NCBI GenBank assembly: GCA_963924565.1
Contig: OZ004607.1
Span: 27,032,001 to 27,096,000 of the forward strand
Length of the DNA stretch: 64,000 nucleotides
Source of the DNA: Ascidiella aspersa
Taxonomy: Eukaryota
Direction of reading: 5' to 3'
In this document: piece after piece, positions 39,701-60,200 of the stretch
How the letters are laid out: every line of letters starts with the position of its first letter
Numbering within the stretch: position 1 is the stretch's first letter
Notes under the pieces: model-generated
Database searches by the model: none
What the model saw: only the letters and a program-made list of their open reading frames with translations
Told to the model about the DNA's origin: nothing
Program-made: the position numbers and the translations under genes

Positions 39701-42700
39701 GGCGATTCGGCGACTGCCCAAGTACACGGTCAACGTCGAGCAGGTACAGACTCTGAGCTTTTGTGTTGGGATTAGCTTACACTTGAAGGCATGGTCTCGT
39801 CCTGTTTTGTGTAGGTTTTGATTTTTCAATCGTCTAGGTTGGCTTTGCTAGTTTGTGCACGTGTCAGTTTTGTATCGACTTATAGGCTGTCGTTTTTTTC
39901 TGCCAAATCAACCTACTTCGTATTCGGCCGCGTCGTTTCATTTCGCCGAATTAATTTTATCTATACACGGTTTTTGTGAAATTGTGCTCTAAGAGAATTT
40001 TACTAACAGTGTGAGATGGGGGCCTTCTGTATTTTAAAAGGCCTTATATGTTTGATAAACAAAGCTAATTAATAAACGTATATATTTCTCCGGAAATTCT
40101 TATTTTAATGTATTGCCATTACGTGGTATGAGCACAATAAAAGTATATTAAATGAATAATTTACCTAAAACGTTTAATTACTGAACGGCAATAAAAAACG
40201 TTTAATTACTGAACGGCAATAAAAACAATACAGCTTTTAACTAGCTCCTGAAATATAGTTACGTAATTAAACTAACATTGACGATAATTACTAAATTTAC
40301 ATATAACATTGATAAATGTCATAGAACTTAGTCTTTTTACCGAAATGTCTTATTATGCTGCTGCAATATTGTACAACAAAACATGGACTCAACGAAATTG
40401 ATAAAGGTGATAGCTGATAAGTTACTATACTTTCTATAAACGTGTTCGTAACTTCAAAAGGCGGGTTAATTGACTATAGAAGCTATAAAAAATTACTGTA
40501 TGAAGAGTCAAGTGAAGTTGCATTTTCACTGCAAAAACAATAGAAGCAGACAACAACTGCTTTTTTGACATTCACGTTCTTTGTGTGAGTGACTGATATA
40601 CTACAGCTGTGAGGACTGAAGATATATCAACCTTCAAATTGCTAAAGCTTAAAACCTCCTGATGTAACCGCGCAGAACTTTTACACAATATTAACGTACT
40701 GTAACAAAATATTACAACAAATGTAAGCATAATATAGTGACTTAGGCCATAGATTGCAAAATGCTAACATTATTTACTCGATTGGTACAAATACGGCTGG
40801 ATTACAGAAGGATTGAGAACCGCGCAGGCACGTTTTACGAAGTAACATTTTCAGAGGCATTGTTAAAATCAATGACTCATAGCGATTGCTCATATGAACA
40901 ATATTAGCAAATTAGCTAACATAAACATCGAGATACATTAATAACATATGTGAAAAGAAAACATTTTGAATTTTAGTATTATTCCACGGCTAAGTTACTT
41001 AACTAACCTTAACGTAATCAGCGGCGATCAACACAAACGATAAGCGACATCACTAATACACAATGTAGATGATCTACGTTTTGTAAAGTGTATTGGAAAG
41101 TCCTATCTTGCGGTACTTTTCTAGCAAACACATACGCCGAGAGACAGTAAATAGTTGACACACGTATAAGAAGGTTACATTATAATACTTGATTATTCAA
41201 CGTTTTGTGCTACAGAGTTATGTGTTATAACTGCTAATTTTAAAGAAAAACGGTACAGTTTGAAATATACTTATTACTTATGGCACATTTAACAGTAGAA
41301 AAGTACACACCAGTTATTTTAAACAGTTGTATTTTGCCTTCACCATTACGCTTATTTTAGTTAAAAAGCTATGATTCCGTCTAGCCCAGTGGTTCTCAAA
41401 GTTTTTTATATTCCTCCCTTACAAATTCAAACGCTTGTCAATTCCTCCCCAGAAAAAAACATCAAGTATTCTACCTTTTATTATGTATTACTTCGATGTA
41501 CCCTGCTGACAGGAAATCAAACCTACAGGGAAAAGTCGACAAAACTAAATATATAATATATATGTAAAACTGCAATAGACACATCTGCGCCAAAAGCCAA
41601 GACTTGTTACAAAATTTGGATACGCTAATCGTTTCAAAGTTGAGTTTGTTTGAACGTATGACATAGGCATGAATTTTATACTTAATGCCTGCATCGGTGT
41701 ATATTTCTTAAATGGTTGTAACTATGAAGAAACATACAATACCAATCATTACAAAAAAGCTTTACACTGCGTATATTAAAACCGATTTTTTTTTCGACTT
41801 TAGTGTTTAATTGTTTCTAAATATTTTGTCTTTTGAAAGTGATGGGTGATTTGCCGTAGATATTTAGCGGAGAGACAGAGTCAGTTAAAGTCCACCTTAA
41901 TGGCAAAACACAGTAATGCGATTTTTTGGCTTCAGAATAGCCAGAAAGCCGTCAACTAGTTTAAGACTGCGCGTTGCCAGCGCTTGCAAAGACCGCCTTT
42001 CTTTGTTCTTTGATAAAGTTGGTCGCGTTTTCTTCAAGCTCACTTCACGACCTTTTGAAATAGATGAAATAAACTATTCGATGCTTTCAAAAGTGGATAT
42101 GAAATCTTCAGTGGAAAACACACGGCTCGCTGACCTGCTAAGACCCGTGCATGGAGGTTAAGCAGATAAGTCAGTTGTGCGCGACCAACATACCGAACTG
42201 GTTGCCTCAAAATGGATGGTAAATCCGTATGACATTCTGTTTTAGTAATCAAACCCTATACATTTTCTGTGTGAGCTCGACTACTTGCACTCTAGCGGTA
42301 AACTGTATTGCTTTGTAAACTGTTGCTCTAAGGTGCCCGAAATATGTGTCGCAAACTCGGAAACACCATTTATACAAAACTTGTTTCAACCGAAATTGGA
42401 TATTCGCATACGTGTCTTAAAACTAAAATGGCGCCGCGAAGACATAAAAGTTGAAAAACGCTGCTTTAATTAAAAGTTTTGTACGGTCTACCAATCAGTT
42501 AGCCGTTTTATACCACTATAGAAGTGTTTTGATTTAAAAAATTCTATAAACAGAGTACATTATACGATAAATCATTCGCGTGTCCGGTCGTTCTGCCGTA
42601 TTTGCTTGCATTGGAAAATCTCAATTGCAAAGTCAAACGGGTAGGAAAAAGTCTGTTGCAGTTTGTCTTTTTACACATAAAACAGCCCGAACATATATTT

Positions 42701-45700
42701 AGTTTCTAGCCCGTAGAACGACCAGAAAGCCGCCAACTAGTTTCAGGCTGCCGGTCACCAGCACTTGCAAATGCCGGCCGCTTTTGTTTGCCCTTTGTTG
42801 ATTATCGTCTCCCGAGATCTTTCCCATCAAGCTCCGATCACGACCTTTCGAAATGGATGCAATGAATTCTTCGATGCTTTCATGGGTGAATATGGAATCT
42901 TCAGGCATGTGCTGCGGTTCTGCATACGGAAAAAGTTACTAATTTGCGCGATTTATGTAGTACCTTTCAAAATTTTCAGCTGGAAGCTGGTCGATCCGAC
43001 TAGCTAATAAGGCGTGTAATTTACGTGTTGTTGTTCGGGTAATACCTTTAGGCCGATTTCGTCCCCAAAAAGAAGTAATACAATTATGTTTATTTTAATC
43101 TGTGTGTAATTTATTGCAGAATACACCTTCTATATTCTAACGTAGTCAAATCAAAGAAGCAGTATTACAAATTCGCTATTCGTTGGAGTTTTACATTTGT
43201 AGATAACCCTGCGTTTCTAAATAACAATACACAATATCACTTACAAAACAGTATTTTTCGTATATGGCCGTATTTGTCAAGCAAGGGGCGGCACCCAAGC
43301 AAGGCTCACAGTCGAACGAAACACAATTAAACAGTTCGATGCCATCAATGATATCTTAGACCAGTGGTTCTCAACCTTTTATGCTTCGTGGCCCCCTTTG
43401 AAAGGCTCTCAACCCTCGTGGCTCCCCTGCTTATAAAAATACCAAGCATTGTGTTTAAAGTCTCTTCACTTGTTTTACTTCTTTACGTTAACCACCAATA
43501 CAGCCATTAATCAACGATAAATGCACTTACTTTCTAAAAATTTAACAAAGAAGTCATTTTATTTCAAACTATAACTTAGTTAGTCATTACAAATTTTGTT
43601 CTTCGACGCCACCAAGGTATTTTATATATTCGGCTCTGTTTTGTACTGAGCCATGTCACTACACTCGTCGAGATGATTACTCGATTTTCGTTTTATTAAT
43701 GCGCGTTACTATTAGCCTACTTGACAAATAAGCTGCATAAACCGATGAATGTTGGCCTAAAAATGACCTTTTGAATAACCCGGTAGCGTATTTTATGCGT
43801 TTTACGGTGAAATGTTTCCTTTGCAACTGAACGCCCTTAAAGGAAATTGCGAACCGTTGCACCTGGCAATACACACTGGTTACTAACAGCATTTGCGGAC
43901 ACTTAATGATTGGGCGAAGGGTATCGGCAAGTAATAATTGGCCGCTCGAAAAAAACGCTGACGCCGCACGATAGATGACTATCTACAAAGCAGCACAGTA
44001 ATTGTTTTGCCACAGCGACAGGTCCCTAACCAAACTTGCCACTCGCGAACGACCAATTAGGCCTAACTTTCTGCGATAAAACGAATAAAAAGAATTCAAT
44101 ATTCTACTTTAAACATCCCTACTAACTAGTCAAAGTAGGTGTCAGAAAAATGTGTTACAAAGCGTTACAAGAAAGGTTTTCATAATAAAAACACAAAATT
44201 AAATTAACTGGTAAATTTTGAAAATAGTGACACTTTGGTTTTCGCAATATTTAGCTGGAGAGTTATGCCGGTGGCCCCCCAATGACCGGTCCGTGGCCCC
44301 CCAGGGGGCCGAGGGCCATGGTTGAGAAACCCTGTCTTAGATGTCACCATTCTTATCGCCTTTTACTTGCGCTTGTGCTTTTACGTGCATTTTAATTGTT
44401 TTCATTTACACTTTGACCTGATGAAGCACGGTTGTGCGAAAGCTTGTCGAGAATCCAATACAATTTGTCCTTATACAGTGCCACCTGATTCCTCTAAAAT
44501 AGTATTTGTGTGATTTTTTTTTGTGTGTTTTACTTTTAACACCAACCTGACATTTCCTGCAATTCCACCCAGGCATCTTTGTTCCTTATTAGTCGATCTT
44601 GTTCGTCTCGTGTAGCTTGCTTGCCGTCATCGAAAATAACGTTCGAGACGAAGGCGGCGCGTGAAAAGTTGCAGCTTTGCAGCAGAGCCAGGTGATTGAA
44701 GGCGTTCCTATCCAACGTGATGTTAAAGACCAGAACTCGCTCGCAGACTTTCCCGACGCGCGCTTCTTCCCGCTTTGCTTCCTGCATGAACCAAGTCTTG
44801 GCGCACGTCATGCTACGCATCGTGTGCGCGCCGTCCAAATAGAAACTCGTCGAGTCGAACTTGATAACCTGTGATCTGCCGTTTAACTCGCAGTTCTCGA
44901 GCGCATTTTTGTGCTTTTCGCCGATGTGATCCAGTCCTAAGTGGGCGCCCACACCAAGATGCGTGCGCAGCCATTGGTTCGCCAAGTGAACGGCGAGGGA
45001 CGTGTTAAGCTCTTGGTGTTTGCCCGCAAGCGAAAGTCTAACCTTTCCTGTCTGATTGTCGCAATTCGCAAGTTTGGGAACCACCGAGAGCGGCACGTTT
45101 TTCTCCAAAGCGACATCGTTGAGAATCTTCACGGCGTCGATCGGTTGCCTGACAGTGAACGCGGGCGAGCCAGGCTTGAAAATTCCCGCTTTGTGCCACG
45201 CGATGGACTCGGTGCTGTTGCCCAACAGCTTTATGTGGTCAACTCCGATGGAAGAAACCCCACACACAGTCGGCCTAGGAACTACGTTTGTGATGTCATA
45301 AGCACCGCCTATTGACACCTCCAGTATAGCTGCATCCACGCTTTCGTGCTTGAAGACGTAGAACGACATGGCGGTGATAAAGTAATAAAAATCTGGAAGC
45401 GGAACTGTTCGCTGGCTTGCGGTCGCCTTCAATCGTTCGTCGACCTTCCAAAAGTAATCGGTGAAAAGTTGTCTCGAAATCGGTTTTCCGTCGATTCTGA
45501 TCCTTTCTCTCACTTCAACCAAATGCGGAGAGGATAGAAATCCGGTTTTCACTCCGTGACGCTGCAATATGCCTTCAACGAAAGCGCAAGTCGAACCCTT
45601 GCCCTTAGTGCCTGTGACATGAACCGCGTTCATCTTGTTGAGGTCGTTCTCGTCCACGTCAAGTCCGCGAAGAAATCCCTGCATGGTTTCTTTGGCGTGA

Positions 45701-48700
45701 ATCCCATAAGGGGCACCGCCAAACATGTCTAAGCCCATATATTTATACAGGGCGTTTACTGCTCTGTGGTAGCTTATGTCGTTTCTCAACTGGTGAAGGC
45801 ATCTTGTTAACCAAAGATTTTTCCTGGCGCCGAGCAAAGTAACGTTCATTCTAATCATCTTTTTTCGCCGTCGGTTTAAAAACTTGCCCGCACTTTAAAT
45901 ATTCCACAATGTTGCGGTCTGCTGCTTGTACATTTGACTTGCTATTGTTCTGAATTATGAGCTAAATATAAGGCGGTTGTTAGTTAAGTCGAAAAACACT
46001 TAAAACAATTATTTCTATAATTAATTAAAGCGACAACCTGTCAACATAATTATCTGCAATCGTGTTGACACAACCAACTGTCGTTTTCTTTTTAAGCAGT
46101 AAGTTATGCGTTAACAGCCAAGCGTATTCTGGGGGTCAACGAAAACTCGGTCGTTCGGTCTCGGTTAGGTTAAAGACAATCAAGCGTAACCAACAGAAAG
46201 GTCGAAACTACCTTGTCCACAGCAGTCCTCCTCTACCTATCTATGCCATAAACTGGCACATTTTGGGGGCGAATTCAAAACCAATTGTTGCACCGCTTTC
46301 TGTTGTATCATGTTCGTTGAGACAATTTGTGCGAAAATGTACACACTGCAAACACCTATTCGCTAACCGTTACAAATACTAACCCTCGTAAACGAAGGGA
46401 CGTGCTTAGTTCGTCCTATAGCACGTTTTACAATTATCACACGCAGTTTACGATAACGCGTCTCTAAAACACTTTACTAAGCTTTAATCACCAGTTGTAG
46501 ATATCACATATCTTGAAGTAACCATATGATATTGTGCACTTATGCAATAAGTCACAAATTTAACGAAATAAACGAAGCACAATTTTATGGACCACTTTTT
46601 CCATCTACCGCACCGGTGGTCAAACCGCGGCTCTTCAACCAGTTTTATGCGGCTCTTACGTTCATTTCGTATAAATTTTTGGGGGATGTTCGATGTCTAT
46701 TATCGTGTGCCCAATTTTTGCCTTTTTTCGCCGAATTCTACTTATTATCTGCAAAAATTTTCGCGCCTTGCACAAAGCGTTTACCTTTCCACTATGCCTC
46801 AGTCTGAGAAATCTTGTTAGAATGGTACTTCGCTAACACCTTAAGGGGTGATGGTTTTTGTTGTCCTACCTTTTGAAAGTTTTCATGCTTGATATCCGTT
46901 GCAAAGTTGCACACACTGTTTTGGGGCTTTTATATCACGCCTAACAAACAAAATTATAGGATCTACCTCTGCTCAGATTCCACTTTCTTTTGTCAACAGA
47001 TTTCGGAAGCGTTAACAATGTGATGGCTATTATTTGAGCAGTCCTGTAGTCTGAATATAAATTTGCTTAAATGTAACTTATACGGAATATTGAGTTGATA
47101 AAATAATAATATTATTAATTTGAATAAGTCACTTCCTTCGAATGAATCATTCGAGTATATGAGAAAAAAACAGAATGTACATAATTTATGTAAATGAGAA
47201 ATTAATCATGATGTACAAAGAAAAGATGTACATAATTTGTGTAAATGAGAAAGAGACAGGATCTACAAAGAAAAGATGTACATCATTTGTGTAAATGAGA
47301 AAGAGACAGGATCTACAAAGAAAATATGTACATCATTTGTGTAAATGAGAAAGAAACAGGATGTACATAATTTGTAAAAATGAGAACAAACAGGATGCAC
47401 ATAATTTCCAATGTGTAAGGGGTGTTGCTCTTCGCAGTAATGCAAGTAACAAATGTGGCTATTGGTCTCTGACTGGTTGGCCACTTCTGCTACTGTGGAA
47501 TAACTTTGAAAATGTTATTAAACGATGGGATTTGACTGAATGTATGAAGTAAAAATCAAACGTAAAACCCGTCCAAGAGTATAACCCGCGCCAATAAACG
47601 TTTACCGTAGTCGCCATTTCGGTGAAGTTATTTTAACTTAAGCTATTAGCATGTTTTTTTTGTGTTTTTTTTAACTTGCAGACCAAGAAATACGGCGGTG
47701 AAGTATGTGACATCACAATCCAAATTGTGCTCAACAATGCCGACGACCTATCGTCACTTCAAACTGCTGGAAAAAAGCACGCCTGTTTACTGCTGATTGG
47801 TGCGTGATGTGTAAATCTAATAAATACAAACCCGTTTTTTGTAACCAAGATAGTCGAAAACCCGACGTTGTCGCATCTTATTAGAAATACTGCCTGCTGG
47901 CCCGAATATAATTTTTCTTTGCGAGCTTTCCTTATAAAATGAGATAACTATATTTTTTAAGACATGTATCGTATGGTCGTAATCATAGATTTCTGTGCAT
48001 AGTACGAAACATACATGAAAATGATGTACAGTTGTACACGTTTAGTAAAGAAAGCTAGAACTCATTATGTTTTTATGGCGTTTGTTTTATATATGTATAA
48101 TCAGAGTATTTTGTGCAAAGTTATAAATGGGTATGTAATAGATATACATATGTATTGGGCAATTAAGCTAAAACATATTGTTGTAGCGGAAACACTAACT
48201 GCTTCGCTGACATGATACCCATTTTTGCAGGCGACACAGACAATCACGTCATCATAAAGCAGCGCATATTCGACAGCACTCTGACGTCATCAAGCGATCA
48301 TGCGTGGCAGCGGTCGGTCACGGTTCGGCGAGCGGCAAGAGGAGACGAACTCAGTGTGAAGCTTATAAGCATGGACTGGGGTGAGTTTTCCATAAAAAGA
48401 AAATCGCGCGATGTTTTAATAGGATATTTTATTGAGTTTTGGTGGTGGTACGAATAATATGTTTTACTTACTTTTTGAATTTAATGTAGCTTGGTAGGTT
48501 CTAACTTGTTTTAATGATATAGTATTATGTATAGTGAAAGTGAGTAAAACACATCATTTGAATACAATTCAATTAGACCAGTGGTTTTTAACCTTTTTTC
48601 AGTCGCGACCCCCTTTGTAATACAATGGCAAATGTTGCAAAAATATAGATTAGCGCAAAAAAGTTCGAGTCCCGCTGTTGCTAGGCTGTTATCTTCATCA

Positions 48701-51700: not shown

Positions 51701-54700
51701 AAACAGTTAAAAATCTCCTAATGCTGAAAGAACCAATGCGCGAAATCTATTTTCCTGTTTATTCGTCGCTTTAAGCTTCACGCTGAAACATGCCATGCAG
51801 ACTAACTCCGCCTTTATCTTTATTTCAAGATCGCCAGGATGGGAACATTTGCACTCATTCGCCGAACAAATGCAGACGGCGGCGGAGTGCGACCTTGACG
51901 AGAAAAAGGAAACCGGAGAACCGCTTGGTACGAGCGAGTTTGCAAGAGAGCAGGGATATTACCAGGTGGGATACGATTTTAAAGCTGACCGCTTTAATCA
52001 GAACACCAGTAAATCACGCCTTCTATATTTTCAATTTTAAATGTAAATAATAAGCAAGGGACCTTCGCTTTGCTTGTTTTTCACCTTTTTTATTCTTACT
52101 TTGACCTGATAAAGCTCGGTTGTGCGAAAGCTCGTCAATTCCATACAATTTGTCGACAGTGCCACTTATTTTCTATTTTTGAATAAGACAATACGGCTAT
52201 CAACCAAGATTAATTAAACTAGCATCGTAATAGCTAATGTTTTACACAAGAAATTAAAATTTTAAGCTTTTGCTAGTCCTCTTTGTTTCAACTTTTCACT
52301 GTTGTAAATCCAAGCAATAAAACACAAATCATTTATTCCAATAAAAACACTAACTCAGCAGTCGTCCAGACCCTTGGCCCTAAAATAGTTCGCCTTTTTT
52401 CTCAGGACCAAATTAACTTGAGATCCAGGATAACTCGTGCGGATGAGGATGACTTCGCGGCCGAGAGTGGTAAAACACTAGTGAAGAAAAATACGAAAGA
52501 CGAGAGGTTGTGGACAATTAAAGGCGATTCGCAGGGTGTGCTAACTGTTGCATTTTTCAGAAATACTCTGCCGTTACTTAATCGTGAAACCGTAATCTAA
52601 AGGTTTTTTTTCAAAATGAACTTTAATTCATAAATAGATTAAACGATACACCGAAAGCAATTGCAGACTTACCGAATCTGTTGATCTATGATGCAAGCAG
52701 GGAAGGCTAGAAAAACTACTCGTTCCTTTTTGAGCCTGTATAGCTCAGTTGGTAGAGCGACGGTCCCAGCTTGACCGGAGGTCGTAAGTTCAAACCTCAA
52801 TGCAGGCTAGTTGTTTTTCTTGCCTGCCCTGCTTGCATCATAGATCAACAGATTCAGTGTGTCTGCGATGGCTTTCGGTGTACTAATTATACGTAAGCCG
52901 TAATCGTTGGTCAAAAAGCAGCTTCAAGGCTAGATCTCAGTTGTTAACACACTGTGTGTGCAACTGTGCAGTGTGCATGTTTCATAAATAGATTAAACAA
53001 TGTTATTTTCTTACGCATTTTCTGATCGAAGATGATGAAGACGGTGACCTACAGCTGGCCAGCTTGCAGCCCCGCGCTTACAAGCACGGACTCGCCAATG
53101 GATCGTCGGTATCGCAGAAACTCGCTTGCAAGGCAAGGTTTAAGGTCGGACAGATTTTATCTTTCTATGTAAAAACGAAATTATCAACTTTGATTGCAGT
53201 CATATAATTGTCGTCTTGTAATTTACCAATTATTTCACCACAACTTTTGTCCCCCAACCTAAATCTCCTTATGGTTAAGTGAAAAACGGACTACCTAAAA
53301 ATTGCAACCAAAAGCGCTGCCTATATTAATAATCATTTGTATTCTCTTTCAATTAAAGATTTAATATAAATTGCGTATTCGAGCTATTTCTAACTATGCA
53401 ACTTAACGATGGCCCTGATTCGTTTTGCAACAATGTAACTCGTACTTTTCAAATGATCATTTACTTTGTAAAACGCGTATTTATTTATGTTTTGTAAATT
53501 TAGACCAATGGCGGCTCAACGCCAAGTCGTATGGGCAAGGTGTTTGCGTGGAAGTCATCAAATTGTGAGCGACCCGCGTCCAACGCTACAAGCTTCACCT
53601 TCGATCAGCCGCCACTAAATGACCCTCACAGATCTAGACCACCAAAGAACAATTGCGAACCTGTAGAAAAATCTTACGGCCAAGTCGACAGGAGATACGC
53701 CCAAGGCATCCAGCGATCGCAAGGCGAAGGCGTGTTTTCAGCCCGTAAAACCGAATCTCGTAGTCAGTGTGGAGCGAAAGATGCAAGCTATAATCGAGGG
53801 TCGAATTTAGCCTCTTCAGCCATTCGCGAATTTTCCTCCGAAGTTACGGGTTCAGTAGTACGCAAAATGACTAGCACAGGACAGGGTATTAGCTCAAGCA
53901 AACCTGTGGCCGTTGAAAACAGGCAAAGTGTATTGTGCTCGAACGACGAAGGTGATTCGGTTGGCGAGGGATTGCAAAGCAGACGAGGTTTGTTTGCCAT
54001 CCAAAGGCATACAGGTGCAGTCGCAGAGCAGAGGCATCAGCTATCGCGACGGTTAGGTTCTCAGGTCAGCTCTATTTCCAACACTTCATCGTTTGGTCAG
54101 GCTCTGTCGTGTAATGCGAGTGCGCGCGGCGTAAGCTTCGCTAAGCAGCAGCAACAACAAACAGACACATACGGGCAGGTTTATCAAGCAAACGCTCCAC
54201 CTAGGAGCCAGTCAGTTGTGGCAGGAAGCATTTGCAACAGCTCATTTGGAGAAAACCCAGCGAAAAACTCACCTGGATTGGTATTCAGCGACCGCAGGAG
54301 TTCTACGAAAGCGAAGTCCCCCTGGTTTAAAACTGCAAGGAACAACTCTTGGGTTTCAACGCCGGCTTCTACAGAAGTTTCAGACAGATTGCCAGCCCAG
54401 GGCCTTTCGATGCTTGATCATTTGTGGGACAAGAGTAACACGTCTGCTTTTGAGGATGGAGACGGAAAGTTGTCGCCTTTTGATGGTAATAGCAGCTGAT
54501 ATATCTTCTTAAGTGAGTTGTTTAAGTTTTTTATTTGGAAAACTCCGTGACGACATTTCACTAACATTATTGCGTTAGATAAGCGTTTTACTTAGAACCA
54601 CGAAACAAACAGTCTTAAGTGATTTGTATAATACCAAATTTAAGTACCAATATACTGTTTCTACCAAATAAAAAAACCTGCTGCATTGAGACATTAATGA

Positions 54701-57236: not shown

Positions 57237-60200
57237 TCACTTGAAGGAGGCCGCTACATTTCCGACGCCTCCGTGTCCGACGATCTTCACTTTGCCGGTG
57301 CCGGCTCGCTTCGACTTGGTGAACTTGCCCATGTACTCGTTCACGCGCTGACGAAGCTGGTTAATCTGCGGCCGACAAATGTAAATGTAAGCTTTTAAGC
57401 GCACTTATGCAAAACTTCAGTAGAATTACTATGTAACGATTTAAAAAGTAAGTAAACCAGGCTAGATTCTATTGTTGCTTGTTTGTTCAAGAGCTGCGGA
57501 GTCGGTTGAAAATAACCCTAGTCCGACTCCAGCTAAGAAAATAAACCCGATTCCGACTCCGCCCTGGTTTGTTGTTGTATTTTGTAAATGTGTAGCTGCT
57601 TAGCAAATTTAAATTTTTGTATAGTGTGCCGTACAATAGGGTGAAAGACTTACGTCATATTTTTGCCGGTTGATTCTCTGCTCGAAGTCATACTTCTCAT
57701 CCTCGAGGACGTACAGCCAGTCCCAAAGCTCAGTCGCCTTCTCGCGAAGCCTTTGAAACAAGCAAAGTTTAGTTGTGCTAAAATTGTGTTTGGACTTCCA
57801 TAGAATTTTCCATCCATGTAATAATTATGCTTACTTGTCAATTCCGAGATGGTCAATGTTGAGGGGCTTACGGCGATCGGCCAAGATCTTGCGCTTCTTT
57901 TCGCGGTCGGTCTGGCGCTTATTCGGCTTGTTCTTCTCGGCCTAATGTAGACAATAACAGAAACAATGTAACTTGTCCTGGTTGCCAACTAAACAGCTTG
58001 TTCCCAAACGTCACACGAATAGTAACTTACACGTGCGAGGTATCCTCCGTAGTGAAGCGACATGTTGGCGATCGCAGCCTTCTTTCTTGCTTCCTCATCC
58101 AAGCGCTTCACTTCTTCCTCCTCTTCTTTCCTCTTGCGCTCTTCCTGAAATTCATAAAAGAACAATTTTGACCAACACGAGCAGACCTTTGTCGTTAAGC
58201 TTAATTTTTATGTACATTTAGAACTACAAAGTGTTTTTCAAATGGACTGCAAGCAATGTTAACTTTTAAATTTTACTAAACTAAACCAGCAAAGCCAACT
58301 AAAAACATATTTTGTAATTTTTAAACAACAACTTAAATGTTATGCGGGTGGGCTTGCTCGATTTTAAAAGTTAGATAAATAGGCTTTAAAGTTGACCAAC
58401 CAAAACCGACAGCTATTGTCAAATCTCACATTCATGTTCATTATATAGGTCATCATAATTTTAGTTATTTCAAAATATTATTAGACTTTTAACAGCCGAA
58501 TTATATAAAATTCAAATTCAAAGTCCAACTCAAAGTTGTGCTCACCCTCTCCTGGGCCATTCTCTGCTTTTCGCGTTCCTGACGCTCGCGGGCCTGCTCG
58601 GACCTCTCGGCCTTGCGCTTGTCGATGCGGATCTTGAGCGCGGCCAGTTCCTCCTCGTCCTTCTTGCGCTGCTCGAAGTGCGCGTTGATAAGTCCCTGCA
58701 GCTCGCTGAGGTCCTTCTCCATACGCTTGCGGTGGATGTCCTCCAGGTCGATCAGCTCGCCATCGGGGATCTTTGGCGGCGTGATACGCGGCACCGAAAG
58801 TCTTCAAAAGGAAAGATTTTTTATTATGGTTGTAGGCCTACTGGAGGAGCTGCTTTGCTACACATCCTTTACGCCAGAGGTTCTTAAACGGGGTCCATGA
58901 ACCCCTTGGGGGTATTTGAACTAGTTTTAGGGGGTCTACATGGCCTAATTGAAATGTTAGTGTATAGGTAAAAAGTAGCCTAATCAACTTTTTAAAGAAA
59001 AGGCTTTAATCGAAAATAAAACTTTTTTGCACTGAATGTTTTTAGACTCTTTTGACCGACAACAGCAGACTTATGAAGTTTATTTGTATTGTGACGTAAA
59101 TTTATGACGCCATCTCTTAAAATTTCTTGCCTACACTGTTCCATGCGAAGCAAAAATTTTTTCAAGGGGCCCGCCGTAAAAAATGTTTAAGAATCCCTGC
59201 TTTACGCGAAATAAATGTGATTGAAAACGTTATATACGTGGAACTTTTGTACCAACTAGGATTTCAGGCTGTGCACTTTAGTGAAACGTGATCGTTTTTC
59301 AGCAGCAACCTTTGCGATACAAAAACAACAAATAATAATTTTGCACTTACTTGGGTGCTTGTGGTGTTTCCGGCTTGAGCTGCACGATAAATAAGACAAT
59401 AAGAGCGTATAAAAATAAGCAAAGTGGCTTAATAAACGCCTATGATGTCTCAATAATTAGAAGAGGCGAATGTTTTAACTTGACCCAATTTTCTACTTCC
59501 TCTTCCCCCTTTTATCCCTTAAGATACTTGGTTAAAATGGTGTAGTGTGTTCTACAGTCCCGATAAAAGGGGTATTCGCTTAACCCTTGCGGCCCCATGA
59601 CGCGTTTGATCGCAAGCTGAGATTATACTACCTCCTCTTGTTGGGTTTCCGGTTCGGGTTCATGCTCGGGTTCCGGTGTTTCTTCCACCTCTTCTTCTTC
59701 TTCAACTTCTTCGACCTCTTCCTGGGTTTGTTCGATCTCCTCCTGACGTCATCAATTCAGCGGCGGACGATGACGCATTAGCGGGTGACGAAACAAAGGT
59801 GAAGAAAGCGTGTGGTTAGCCAGCAGTTACATGCGTGCTTGGTCAATAAACTATAACGTATTTACAGTGAAGCAGAAAGCATGCACGAATGATGACCTTG
59901 CACATAATAGTTCAACAAATATGCGCTATGTTATATCAGACACTACAGCTTTTGTGGAAAATCTAAAAATATTCCTATTGCTGTGGTTTACTAGTTTAGA
60001 CTATGTACAATTTTTAATATTTGTTTTTGCCTAATGTTTGATTTTATAAATTGAACGCAGTCTGCAAAAAATATTTACTTGTATCTTATCTGATGTTGCA
60101 ATAAAGGTTTTCATATTACAGAAAAACAACATGACTACCTTTTTATTTACTCTCTCTATATGTATATACTATTTTCTAGCGCCATATTTAAACTGAATCT

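What the first reader, a model, noticed from the sequence alone, without database searches (positions are those of the whole stretch)
44360..44497. Small repeat family carrying a minimal hammerhead ribozyme, sense within the HFM1 pre-mRNA
Seen: TTGAC CTGATGA A GCAC-GGTT-GTGC GAA AGCT T GTCGA at 44413-44450, and a second family member at 52101-52138 with homologous flanks. Established: minimal type I hammerheads with a palindromic tetramer replacing stem III are typical of Penelope-like elements and retrozymes and can cleave as dimers. Inference: a non-autonomous ribozyme-bearing retroelement family. Both copies are on the HFM1 sense strand (introns 19 and 26), so one nascent transcript carries two AGCT palindromes that could in principle pair. 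Predicted cleavage is after 44445.
Basis: partly seen in the sequence, partly recalled or inferred. Interest (0 to 1): 0.8.

Follow-up and report, generated by a model that had tools for sequence, protein, structure and literature searches.

The report
Penelope retrotransposon remnant with minimal hammerhead
The motif is a real minimal hammerhead ribozyme sequence, but it is the ordinary 3' end of a broken Penelope-like retrotransposon copy lying in an intron, a kind of element already described in the literature.

Summary
Window 44413-44450 holds a complete minimal type I hammerhead: CUGAUGA, one extra A, a 4-bp stem II, GAA, an AGCU palindrome, U17, and a 5-6 bp stem I. A strict descriptor finds it once in the window and never in 300 shuffles.

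It is not a small stand-alone repeat family. It is the 3' tail (pseudo-LTR) of a Penelope-like element (PLE). In longer copies the same tail follows an ORF with RVT_1 and GIY-YIG domains. There are about 2000 first-look candidates in the genome. The 40 that were scored are 96-100% identical, variously 5'-truncated, and often in outward-facing inverted pairs with an optional 36-nt tail extension.

The window copy (43245-43358 plus 44340-44496) is truncated, internally deleted and split by a 978-bp MITE. Other PLE families in this genome carry the same ribozyme architecture with different, compensating helices, which is strong covariation.

Copy B (52101-52138) has G8 changed to A and a stem II mismatch, so it is probably dead. 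One RNA run gave no read-end pile-up at 44445/44446.

All this matches Cervera and de la Pena 2014. First readers of this scan noted the same element type elsewhere in this genome. It is a new member of a known kind, of low interest.

The parts
44413..44450 (+). Minimal type I hammerhead motif. Stem I 5' strand 44413-44417 (a sixth pair is possible at 44412/44451). C3-A9 CUGAUGA 44418-44424. Extra A 44425. Stem II 44426-44429 / 44434-44437 with loop GGUU. G12-A14 44438-44440. AGCU palindrome 44441-44444. U17 44445, with the predicted scissile bond at 44445/44446. Stem I 3' strand 44446-44450.
   Evidence: The monomer minimum-free-energy fold forms stems I and II.
44340..44496 (+). 3' tail (pseudo-LTR part) of a Penelope-like element, family A. 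It ends at ...CCACCTGATTCCTCTA, without the optional 36-nt extension.
   Evidence: 96-97% identity to other genomic copies..
43280..43358 (+). Left part of the same PLE remnant. It holds the last ~24 codons of the RT/GIY-YIG ORF (...[21 protein letters not shown]) and then joins directly to ATATCTTA of the tail. About 140 nt of the family's 3' UTR are missing.
   Evidence: matches L029:1289-1350 at 92%. ORF translation. Junction read.
43245..43279 (-). Inverted copy of the 30-40-nt PLE 'tail' extension (reverse complement of ...GGACAAATACGGCCATATAC...). It marks the 5' boundary of the insertion.
   Evidence: matches L005 and L017 extension sequences. The feature is described in PMC8557442.
43359..44336 (.). 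Unrelated MITE-like insertion that splits the PLE remnant. Terminal inverted repeats GACCAGTGGTTCTCAACC / GGTTGAGAAACCCTGTC. TTA is duplicated at 43356-43358 and 44337-44339.
   Evidence: Depth spikes and loose ends at 43357/43362.
52082..52170 (+). Second, older 5'-truncated tail fragment of a related PLE subfamily. The hammerhead-like motif at 52101-52138 has G8->A (52111) and a U-U mismatch in stem II. C17 is at 52133.
   Evidence: 17.2 bits, E 0.09.

Best explanation
Window 44340-44496 is the 3' terminal region (pseudo-LTR part) of a 5'-truncated, internally deleted copy of a Penelope-like retrotransposon (PLE). A MITE has split this copy. It lies in the sense orientation in a transcribed, probably intronic, stretch downstream of the mapped + strand exons of a Sec63-type helicase gene.

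Like canonical EN+ PLEs, this family carries in its tail a minimal type I hammerhead ribozyme with no helix III of its own. A palindrome (AGCU) can form helix III only by pairing with a second copy. The active form is therefore a double hammerhead in which the core of one copy cuts the strand of the other.

Shown here: the motif, its family, its place downstream of an RT + GIY-YIG ORF, and its covariation across PLE families.

Inferred: in source elements the ribozyme probably helps process multimeric or read-through element transcripts, possibly with help from the element's protein. The copy in this intron is most likely an inert passenger. As a monomer it should not cleave. Its only nearby sense partner is catalytically damaged. 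RNA reads give no sign of cleavage.
For: Motif: complete and non-random.

Family size: about 1970 first-look candidates for the 161-nt query. The 40 scored copies are 96-100% identical.

Link to the coding element: in L032 the same tail follows, in sense, an ORF with Pfam RVT_1 (9e-9) and GIY-YIG (2e-7). That ORF also shows a C-x4-C-x2-C linker and YIDD.

Copy anatomy: variable 5' truncation, outward-facing inverted arms (220 nt at 100% identity in L014), and an optional 36-nt extension at one end.

Other PLE families: 16 of 20 3' regions of PLE families with ~30% amino-acid identity carry the same architecture with different helices. Stem I is TTGAC/GTCGA, ACAAA/TTTGT, AGATATA/TATATCT or AGGAA/TTCCT. 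Stem II is GCAC/GTGC or GCC/GGC. The palindrome is AGCT, ATGCAT or ATATAT. An extra nucleotide after A9 is always present. The descriptor gives 17 hits in 55 kb and none in reversed or shuffled sequence.

Genome scan: all 150 candidates scored with the covariance model reached E<=1.2e-6. By my reading of the hit list there are more than 20 outward-facing inverted pairs and no direct pairs closer than 1 kb.

Conservation: within diverged family A copies the core and stem-loop II are the best conserved columns, 0.90-0.92 against 0.71-0.87 upstream.

Literature: minimal hammerheads in PLE pLTRs have the extra nucleotide between 9 and 10.1, G10.1-C11.1, palindromic 15.x-16.x, opposite-strand pairs 100-700 bp apart, and low activity only as dimers (PMC4209133). 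PLE anatomy with inverted 5'-truncated copies and a 30-40-bp tail is described in PMC8557442.
Against: No Rfam hammerhead model matches.

The monomer fold is not unusually stable (z -0.78).

Nearest-neighbour energies favour two monomers (2 x -10.8 kcal/mol) or a stem-II-swapped dimer (-28.2) over the double hammerhead (-17.9).

RNA run X5 shows no place where molecules begin or end at 44445/44446 and no circular joints.

No intact full-length family A element was found. The N-terminal RT part has only one near-identical hit, which is frameshifted and truncated. The source of the very young copies is therefore not identified.

Cleavage itself was not tested.
Confidence: 0.87

Rival explanations
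1. It is a distinct non-autonomous, ribozyme-bearing retroelement family (retrozyme or SINE-like) that only shares its 3' end with PLEs and is mobilised in trans.
For: There are very many short copies. No intact family A master copy is in the assembly. 4 of 30 sampled copies start within about 6 nt of the same point, at the start of the 157-nt unit. Many DNA contigs diverge just before 44410. A 2026 preprint argues that animal retrozymes derive from PLE pLTRs (10.64898/2026.07.22.740005).
Against: Longer copies run without a break into GIY-YIG and RT coding sequence. Inner junctions differ between copies, so they arose as independent truncations and not as an amplified unit. No head-to-tail arrays were seen: hits are single, in inverted pairs, or about 3 kb apart. 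The window copy's apparent 5' end is created by a MITE insertion, and its ORF remnant lies on the other side.
Confidence: 0.08
2. The intronic hammerhead is functional for the host. Sense copies in the nascent helicase transcript, or PLE RNAs acting in trans, form double hammerheads and cut the pre-mRNA, which would modulate expression.
For: The core at 44418-44440 is intact. A second sense copy with compatible stem I strands and the same AGCU palindrome lies 7.7 kb downstream. The region is transcribed, apparently in the + sense. Family RNAs are present in both directions.
Against: Copy B carries G8->A and a stem II mismatch, so site 44445 has no competent partner core in cis. There is no read-end pile-up at the site. 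Published minimal hammerheads cleave poorly even as designed dimers (PMC4209133). The PAc hammerhead showed no RNA-seq ends at its site (PMC11167929). The insertion is a decayed remnant split by a MITE, and nothing indicates host-level conservation.
Confidence: 0.03
3. The motif resembles a hammerhead core only by chance.
For: No Rfam hit. Weak thermodynamic z-score.
Against: The descriptor gives no hits in 300 shuffles of the window and none in shuffled PLE loci. The motif sits at a fixed position downstream of PLE ORFs in several families, with compensatory helices.
Confidence: 0.005

Closest known systems
Minimal hammerhead ribozymes (min-HHRs) of metazoan Penelope-like elements (Cervera and de la Pena 2014, PMC4209133)
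   Same: Type I topology. CUGANGA and GAA cores. A bulged nucleotide between A9 and 10.1. A G10.1-C11.1 pair. No helix III of its own, with a palindrome at 15.x-16.x instead. Located in the pLTR. Very many solitary copies from truncated elements. Pairs on opposite strands a few hundred bp apart. High helix variability between families within one genome.
   Different: Nothing categorical. This family uses a 4-nt AGCU palindrome with U17, while the other families in the same genome use 6-nt AU-rich palindromes with A17. Activity was not measured here.
Canonical EN+ Penelope-like elements with a CX2-5CxxC linker (Neptune/Nematis type; PMC8557442)
   Same: RT followed by a C-terminal GIY-YIG domain. 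A C-x4-C-x2-C linker and a CCHH pattern in the endonuclease. Heavy 5' truncation. An inverted 5'-truncated copy at the 5' end. A 30-40-bp tail extension at only one end. The hammerhead near the 3' end.
   Different: Clade placement was not tested by phylogeny. No intact full-length copy was recovered in this assembly.
Non-LTR retrozymes of animals (tandem hammerhead repeats that give small circular RNAs)
   Same: The same kind of type I hammerhead with a weak or palindromic helix III. They probably derive from PLE pLTRs (10.64898/2026.07.22.740005).
   Different: No head-to-tail arrays were seen here and no circular-junction reads. The copies continue into PLE coding sequence.
Rfam hammerhead families
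   Same: The same catalytic core consensus.
   Different: No match even at E<=10, because the motif has no helix III hairpin.

Membership tests
PLE minimal hammerhead (min-HHR) | Conserved core C3-A9 (CUGANGA), G12-A14 (GAA), and H17 that is not G | tested here: met
   CUGAUGA at 44418-44424, GAA at 44438-44440, U17 at 44445.
PLE minimal hammerhead (min-HHR) | One nucleotide between A9 and 10.1, and a G10.1-C11.1 pair | tested here: met
   Extra A at 44425. G44426 pairs with C44437. The extra A or U is present in every descriptor-positive PLE hammerhead of this genome that was examined. The feature is named in PMC4209133.
PLE minimal hammerhead (min-HHR) | No stable helix III, with a palindrome at 15.x-16.x that permits a dimer | tested here: met
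   AGCU at 44441-44444. Other families have ATGCAT, ATATAT or ATAT.
PLE minimal hammerhead (min-HHR) | Helices I and II are kept by compensatory changes between families | tested here: met
   Each of the five stem I positions shows two or more Watson-Crick pair types across families A-F. Stem II is GCAC/GTGC, GCC/GGC or GCT/AGC. This was compared by hand and script. A joint covariance-model alignment of all families could not be obtained.
PLE minimal hammerhead (min-HHR) | Located in the pLTR / 3' region of an element that encodes RT and GIY-YIG, in sense | tested here: met
   In L032 an ORF with RVT_1 and GIY-YIG is followed by a ~260-nt tail that holds the motif.
PLE minimal hammerhead (min-HHR) | Self-cleavage after H17 (as a dimer or with protein help) | tested here: inconclusive
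   RNA run X5 shows no read-end pile-up at 44445/44446. Standard cDNA reads from a multicopy family are a weak test.
Penelope-like element (EN+) | A single ORF with RT followed by a C-terminal GIY-YIG endonuclease | tested here: met
   Pfam RVT_1 at 35.7 bits (cut-off 29.6) and GIY-YIG at 31.6 bits (cut-off 22.6) in L032:1501-2859(-).
Penelope-like element (EN+) | Insertion anatomy: 5' truncation, inverted or tandem pLTRs, and a 30-40-bp tail at one end | tested here: met
   and for outward-facing pairs. The definition is taken from PMC8557442.
Penelope-like element (EN+) | RT groups with PLE/TERT-type RTs in a phylogeny | not tested
   No tree was built. The only supporting observations are the domain order and the CX4CX2C linker seen.
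Rfam hammerhead families | Score at or above the family's gathering threshold | tested here: not met
   No hammerhead hit at gathering threshold on the whole window, nor at E<=10 on 44000-45000.
Animal non-LTR retrozyme | Head-to-tail tandem repeats of ~150-400 nt, each with a hammerhead, that yield circular RNAs | tested here: not met
   No same-strand hits closer than ~3 kb among the 150 best covariance-model hits. The 30 sampled loci show single copies or inverted pairs. RNA run X5 shows no go-back joints.

The most novel reading that the evidence does not exclude
Sense PLE hammerheads scattered in introns act together. The intact core at 44418-44440 pairs, through AGCU and swapped stem I strands, with the damaged copy 7.7 kb downstream or with abundant PLE RNAs in trans, and cuts the nascent helicase pre-mRNA (predicted after 52133, not after 44445). 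PLE load would then be a modulator of a meiotic gene.
Probability: 0.02. Interest if true: 0.6.

Novelty: new member of a known kind. Interest (0 to 1): 0.15.

Why it matters
It matters little beyond annotation. The result shows that this genome holds several Penelope-like families, each with its own minimal hammerhead. One of them is very young (copies 96-100% identical). The hit in the helicase intron is a decayed passenger copy.

It may be useful as a clean natural covariation set for the PLE minimal hammerhead: several helix I, helix II and palindrome solutions within one genome. It also shows that Rfam models miss this class. The open question of what PLE hammerheads are for is not advanced by this locus.

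Tried and rejected
1. Rfam scans at gathering threshold and at E<=10 gave no hammerhead hit.

2. I first read 43150-43480 as the inverted arm of a 1.2-kb TIR element. I rejected this. The inverted similarity comes mostly from the ends of a MITE inserted at a TTA, together with the short inverted PLE tail extension.

3. Covariance model R1 included family A in a register shifted by 2 nt in the 3' strand of stem I. It is good for detection only.

4. Model R2, built without family A, did not find family A even with filters off. No joint structural alignment or the count of structure pairs was therefore made. Covariation was tabulated by script instead.

5. RNA reads gave no begin or end pile-up and no RNA joints at the ribozyme. 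This does not support cleavage in vivo, but it is not decisive.

6. Cofold does not favour the double hammerhead.

7. The search for a full-length family A element found only one truncated, frameshifted copy.

9. The HFM1 name and the intron numbers could not be verified. The exons match DEAD, Helicase_C, SNRNP200_wHTH and Sec63, and their closest solved relatives are ASCC3, SLH1 and Brr2.

Full report
OBSERVATION. The sequence is exactly as reported. Window 44413-44450 reads TTGAC CTGATGA A GCAC GGTT GTGC GAA AGCT T GTCGA. In hammerhead numbering:
- C3-A9 is 44418-44424.
- An extra A sits at 44425.
- Stem II is G10.1-C11.1 plus three more pairs, closed by a GGUU loop.
- G12-A14 is 44438-44440.
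- The palindrome AGCU occupies the helix III positions.
- U17 is 44445.
- The following GUCGA(G) pairs with (U)UUGAC just upstream of the core. This gives 5-6 pairs, two of them G.U.

The pattern CTGATGA-N8-30-GAAAGCT occurs once in the window and in none of 100 shuffles. A full structural descriptor gives one hit in the window and none in 300 shuffles. The monomer minimum-free-energy fold forms stems I and II as expected, but it is not unusually stable (z -0.78). Rfam finds no hammerhead at the gathering threshold, nor at E<=10.

The second copy at 52101-52138 is real and has homologous flanks. It carries CTGATAA (G8 to A at 52111) and a U-U mismatch in stem II.

WHAT THE REPEAT IS. A 161-nt query around the motif has about 1970 first-look candidates in the 308-Mb genome. 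The 40 that were scored are 96-100% identical. Many lie in pairs, minus strand then plus strand, 0.2-1.4 kb apart.

In locus L014 the two arms are 220 nt long and 100% identical, and the hammerheads read outward. Between the arms lies the 3' end of an ORF.

In the longest copy found (L032), a 453-aa ORF has Pfam RVT_1 (E 9e-9) and GIY-YIG (E 2e-7), both above their curated cut-offs. It also shows a YIDD motif and a C-x4-C-x2-C linker before the endonuclease. The ORF is followed in sense by a ~260-nt tail that contains the hammerhead and ends at ...CCACCTGATTTCTCTA.

Copies differ in where they are 5'-truncated and in their inner junctions. Some carry an extra 36 nt at one end only.

This is the published anatomy of endonuclease-containing Penelope-like elements: heavy 5' truncation, an adjacent inverted 5'-truncated copy, a 30-40-bp 'tail' at one end, and a hammerhead in the pseudo-LTR (PMC8557442, PMC4209133). 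The repeat is therefore the 3' end of an RT/GIY-YIG element, not a separate small family.

No intact full-length copy was found. The N-terminal RT segment of L032 has only one near-identical hit among all 78 candidates, which is L032 itself. L032 is frameshifted and truncated, with an inverted tail at its 5' end.

THE WINDOW COPY.
- 43245-43279 is the inverted 36-nt tail extension.
- 43280-43350 encodes the last residues of the ORF ([21 protein letters not shown]; 92% identity to L029:1289-1350).
- The sequence then jumps to ATATCTTA of the tail, so about 140 nt of the family's 3' UTR are missing.
- A 978-bp MITE-like element (43359-44336) sits at a duplicated TTA. Its ends are GACCAGTGGTTCTCAACC / GGTTGAGAAACCCTGTC.
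- 44340-44496 is the rest of the tail, with the hammerhead.

The apparent 5' end of the '157-bp repeat' in the window is therefore made by the MITE. Copy B (52082-52170) is a short fragment of an older subfamily.

IS THE HAMMERHEAD REAL? Within family A the copies are too alike to show covariation. Among about 21 diverged copies, the core and stem-loop II are the best conserved columns of the tail: majority fraction 0.90-0.92, against 0.71-0.87 upstream. A second conserved block lies near the 3' end.

The strong evidence comes from other PLE families of the same genome, which share about 30% amino-acid identity in the ORF. A motif of the same architecture but with different helices was found in 16 of 20 of their 3' regions:
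- ACAAA | CUGAUGA U GCC..GGC GAA AUGCAU A | UUUGU
- AGAUAUA | CUGACGA U GCC..GGC GAA AUAUAU A | UAUAUCU
- AGGAA | CUGACGA U GCC..GGC GAA AUAUAU A | UUCCU
- further variants, including a 2-nt shorter palindrome that keeps stem I in register.

The descriptor gives 17 hits in 55 kb of these loci and none in reversed or shuffled sequence.

The extra nucleotide after A9, the G10.1-C11.1 pair and the palindrome are the features that Cervera and de la Pena list as arguments against chance (PMC4209133).

A covariance model built from these motifs found many further copies in the genome. All 150 candidates that were scored reached E<=1.2e-6. By my reading of the hit list, more than 20 form outward-facing inverted pairs, and no same-strand pair is closer than about 3 kb. 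This argues against retrozyme-type tandem arrays.

A joint structural alignment of all families could not be produced by the covariance models. The covariation statement therefore rests on the script tables.

HOW IT WORKS.

Shown: the motif cannot form helix III alone.

Established knowledge (Forster et al. 1988, as cited in PMC4209133): two copies can form a double hammerhead through the palindrome.

Inference from strand continuity: in a type I motif without loop 3, the GAA-AGCU strand of copy 1 pairs with the AGCU-H17 strand of copy 2. Stem I is then also swapped, and each core cuts the other copy.

If the copies at 44.4 kb and 52.1 kb paired in one nascent transcript, the site at 44445 would be served by copy B's core. 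That core has G8A and a broken stem II. G8 changes abolish activity in a PLE hammerhead (PMC11167929). Only the site after 52133 could be cut, by the intact core of the first copy.

Nearest-neighbour energies give -17.9 kcal/mol for the A:A double hammerhead. Two monomers give 2 x -10.8, and a stem-II-swapped dimer gives -28.2. This is in line with the low in vitro activity reported for such motifs.

The role of the ribozyme in the PLE life cycle remains unsettled in the literature. Processing of tandem transcripts has been proposed. It is not needed for insertion in vitro, and cleavage is helped by the element's protein (PMC8557442, PMC11167929).

RNA EVIDENCE. One RNA run of the same species label (X5, raw reads, about 6% read) was laid on 41800-47700.
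- Unique flanks have low, even depth, almost only with the first mate on the minus strand. For the usual stranded libraries this means + strand RNA. That fits intronic reads of the + strand helicase gene. The library type is not on record, so this is an inference.
- The tail bin 44361-44557 has depth 52 and 32 in the two directions, which reflects the multicopy family.
- No place where molecules begin or end was called, and no RNA joints were seen. There is thus no sign of cleavage or circles.
- Loose ends at 44410 and 44448 occur in DNA contigs as well, so they reflect related copies, not RNA processing.

HOST CONTEXT. + strand ORFs between 28.4 and 34.9 kb match DEAD, Helicase_C, SNRNP200_wHTH and Sec63. 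A further + strand ORF at 39.5-39.8 kb looks like helicase sequence by eye but matched no Pfam family. The closest solved relatives are ASCC3, SLH1 and Brr2. This is compatible with HFM1, but neither the name nor the intron numbers were verified. An intronless FPGS-like ORF lies antisense at 44539-45894.

COMPARISON AND NOVELTY. Every feature tested matches the minimal hammerheads of metazoan Penelope-like elements. Two first-reader notes of this scan describe the same element type on other pieces of this genome (s1-790953, s1-791286).

The finding is a new member of a known kind. The only unconventional reading left is host pre-mRNA cleavage by scattered intronic copies. Nothing found here supports it.

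Noticed in passing
window 43359-44336 (similar ends at 41382-41405 and 48573-48617): A MITE-like element of ~978 bp with ends GACCAGTGGTTCTCAACC / GGTTGAGAAACCCTGTC. TTA is duplicated on both sides. DNA contigs show very high summed depth over it.
   Followed up: partly
window 44539-45894 (-): An intronless 452-aa ORF with a Mur_ligase_M match (FPGS-like), antisense to the helicase gene and directly downstream of the PLE tail. RNA run X5 shows no reads of the direction expected for its own transcript, if the library is of the usual stranded kind.
   Followed up: partly
window 52734-52808 (+): A tRNA match (Rfam RF00005, 39.1 bits) about 600 nt downstream of the second hammerhead copy.
   Followed up: no
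window ~57600-58900 (-): Open frames that look by eye like troponin T (for example ...[28 protein letters not shown]...). A second gene on the minus strand therefore probably starts beyond the helicase gene. No domain search was run on them.
   Followed up: no
window 52106-52112; L057; L059; L032:3238-3378: The core change G8 to A (CTGATAA) recurs in several diverged copies and in the inverted arm of the longest copy. Either a subfamily spread with a dead core or the change arose more than once.
   Followed up: partly
L064:1216-1259(-), L069:1591-1634, L070:1579-1622, L074:1568-1614: Another PLE family carries a hammerhead-like motif with GUAA in place of GAAA, an 8-nt palindrome ACUAUAGU and a perfect 7-bp stem I (AGCAGAA/UUCUGCU). 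It may be a core variant or a decayed lineage.
   Followed up: no
L014:695-914 and 1439-1658: 220-nt inverted arms at 100% identity flank a GIY-YIG fragment. A transcript through them would form a long perfect hairpin.
   Followed up: no
window 44426-44437: Stem-loop II (GCACGGUUGUGC) is self-complementary if G.U pairs are allowed. Cofold therefore predicts a stem-II-swapped dimer that competes with the double hammerhead.
   Followed up: partly
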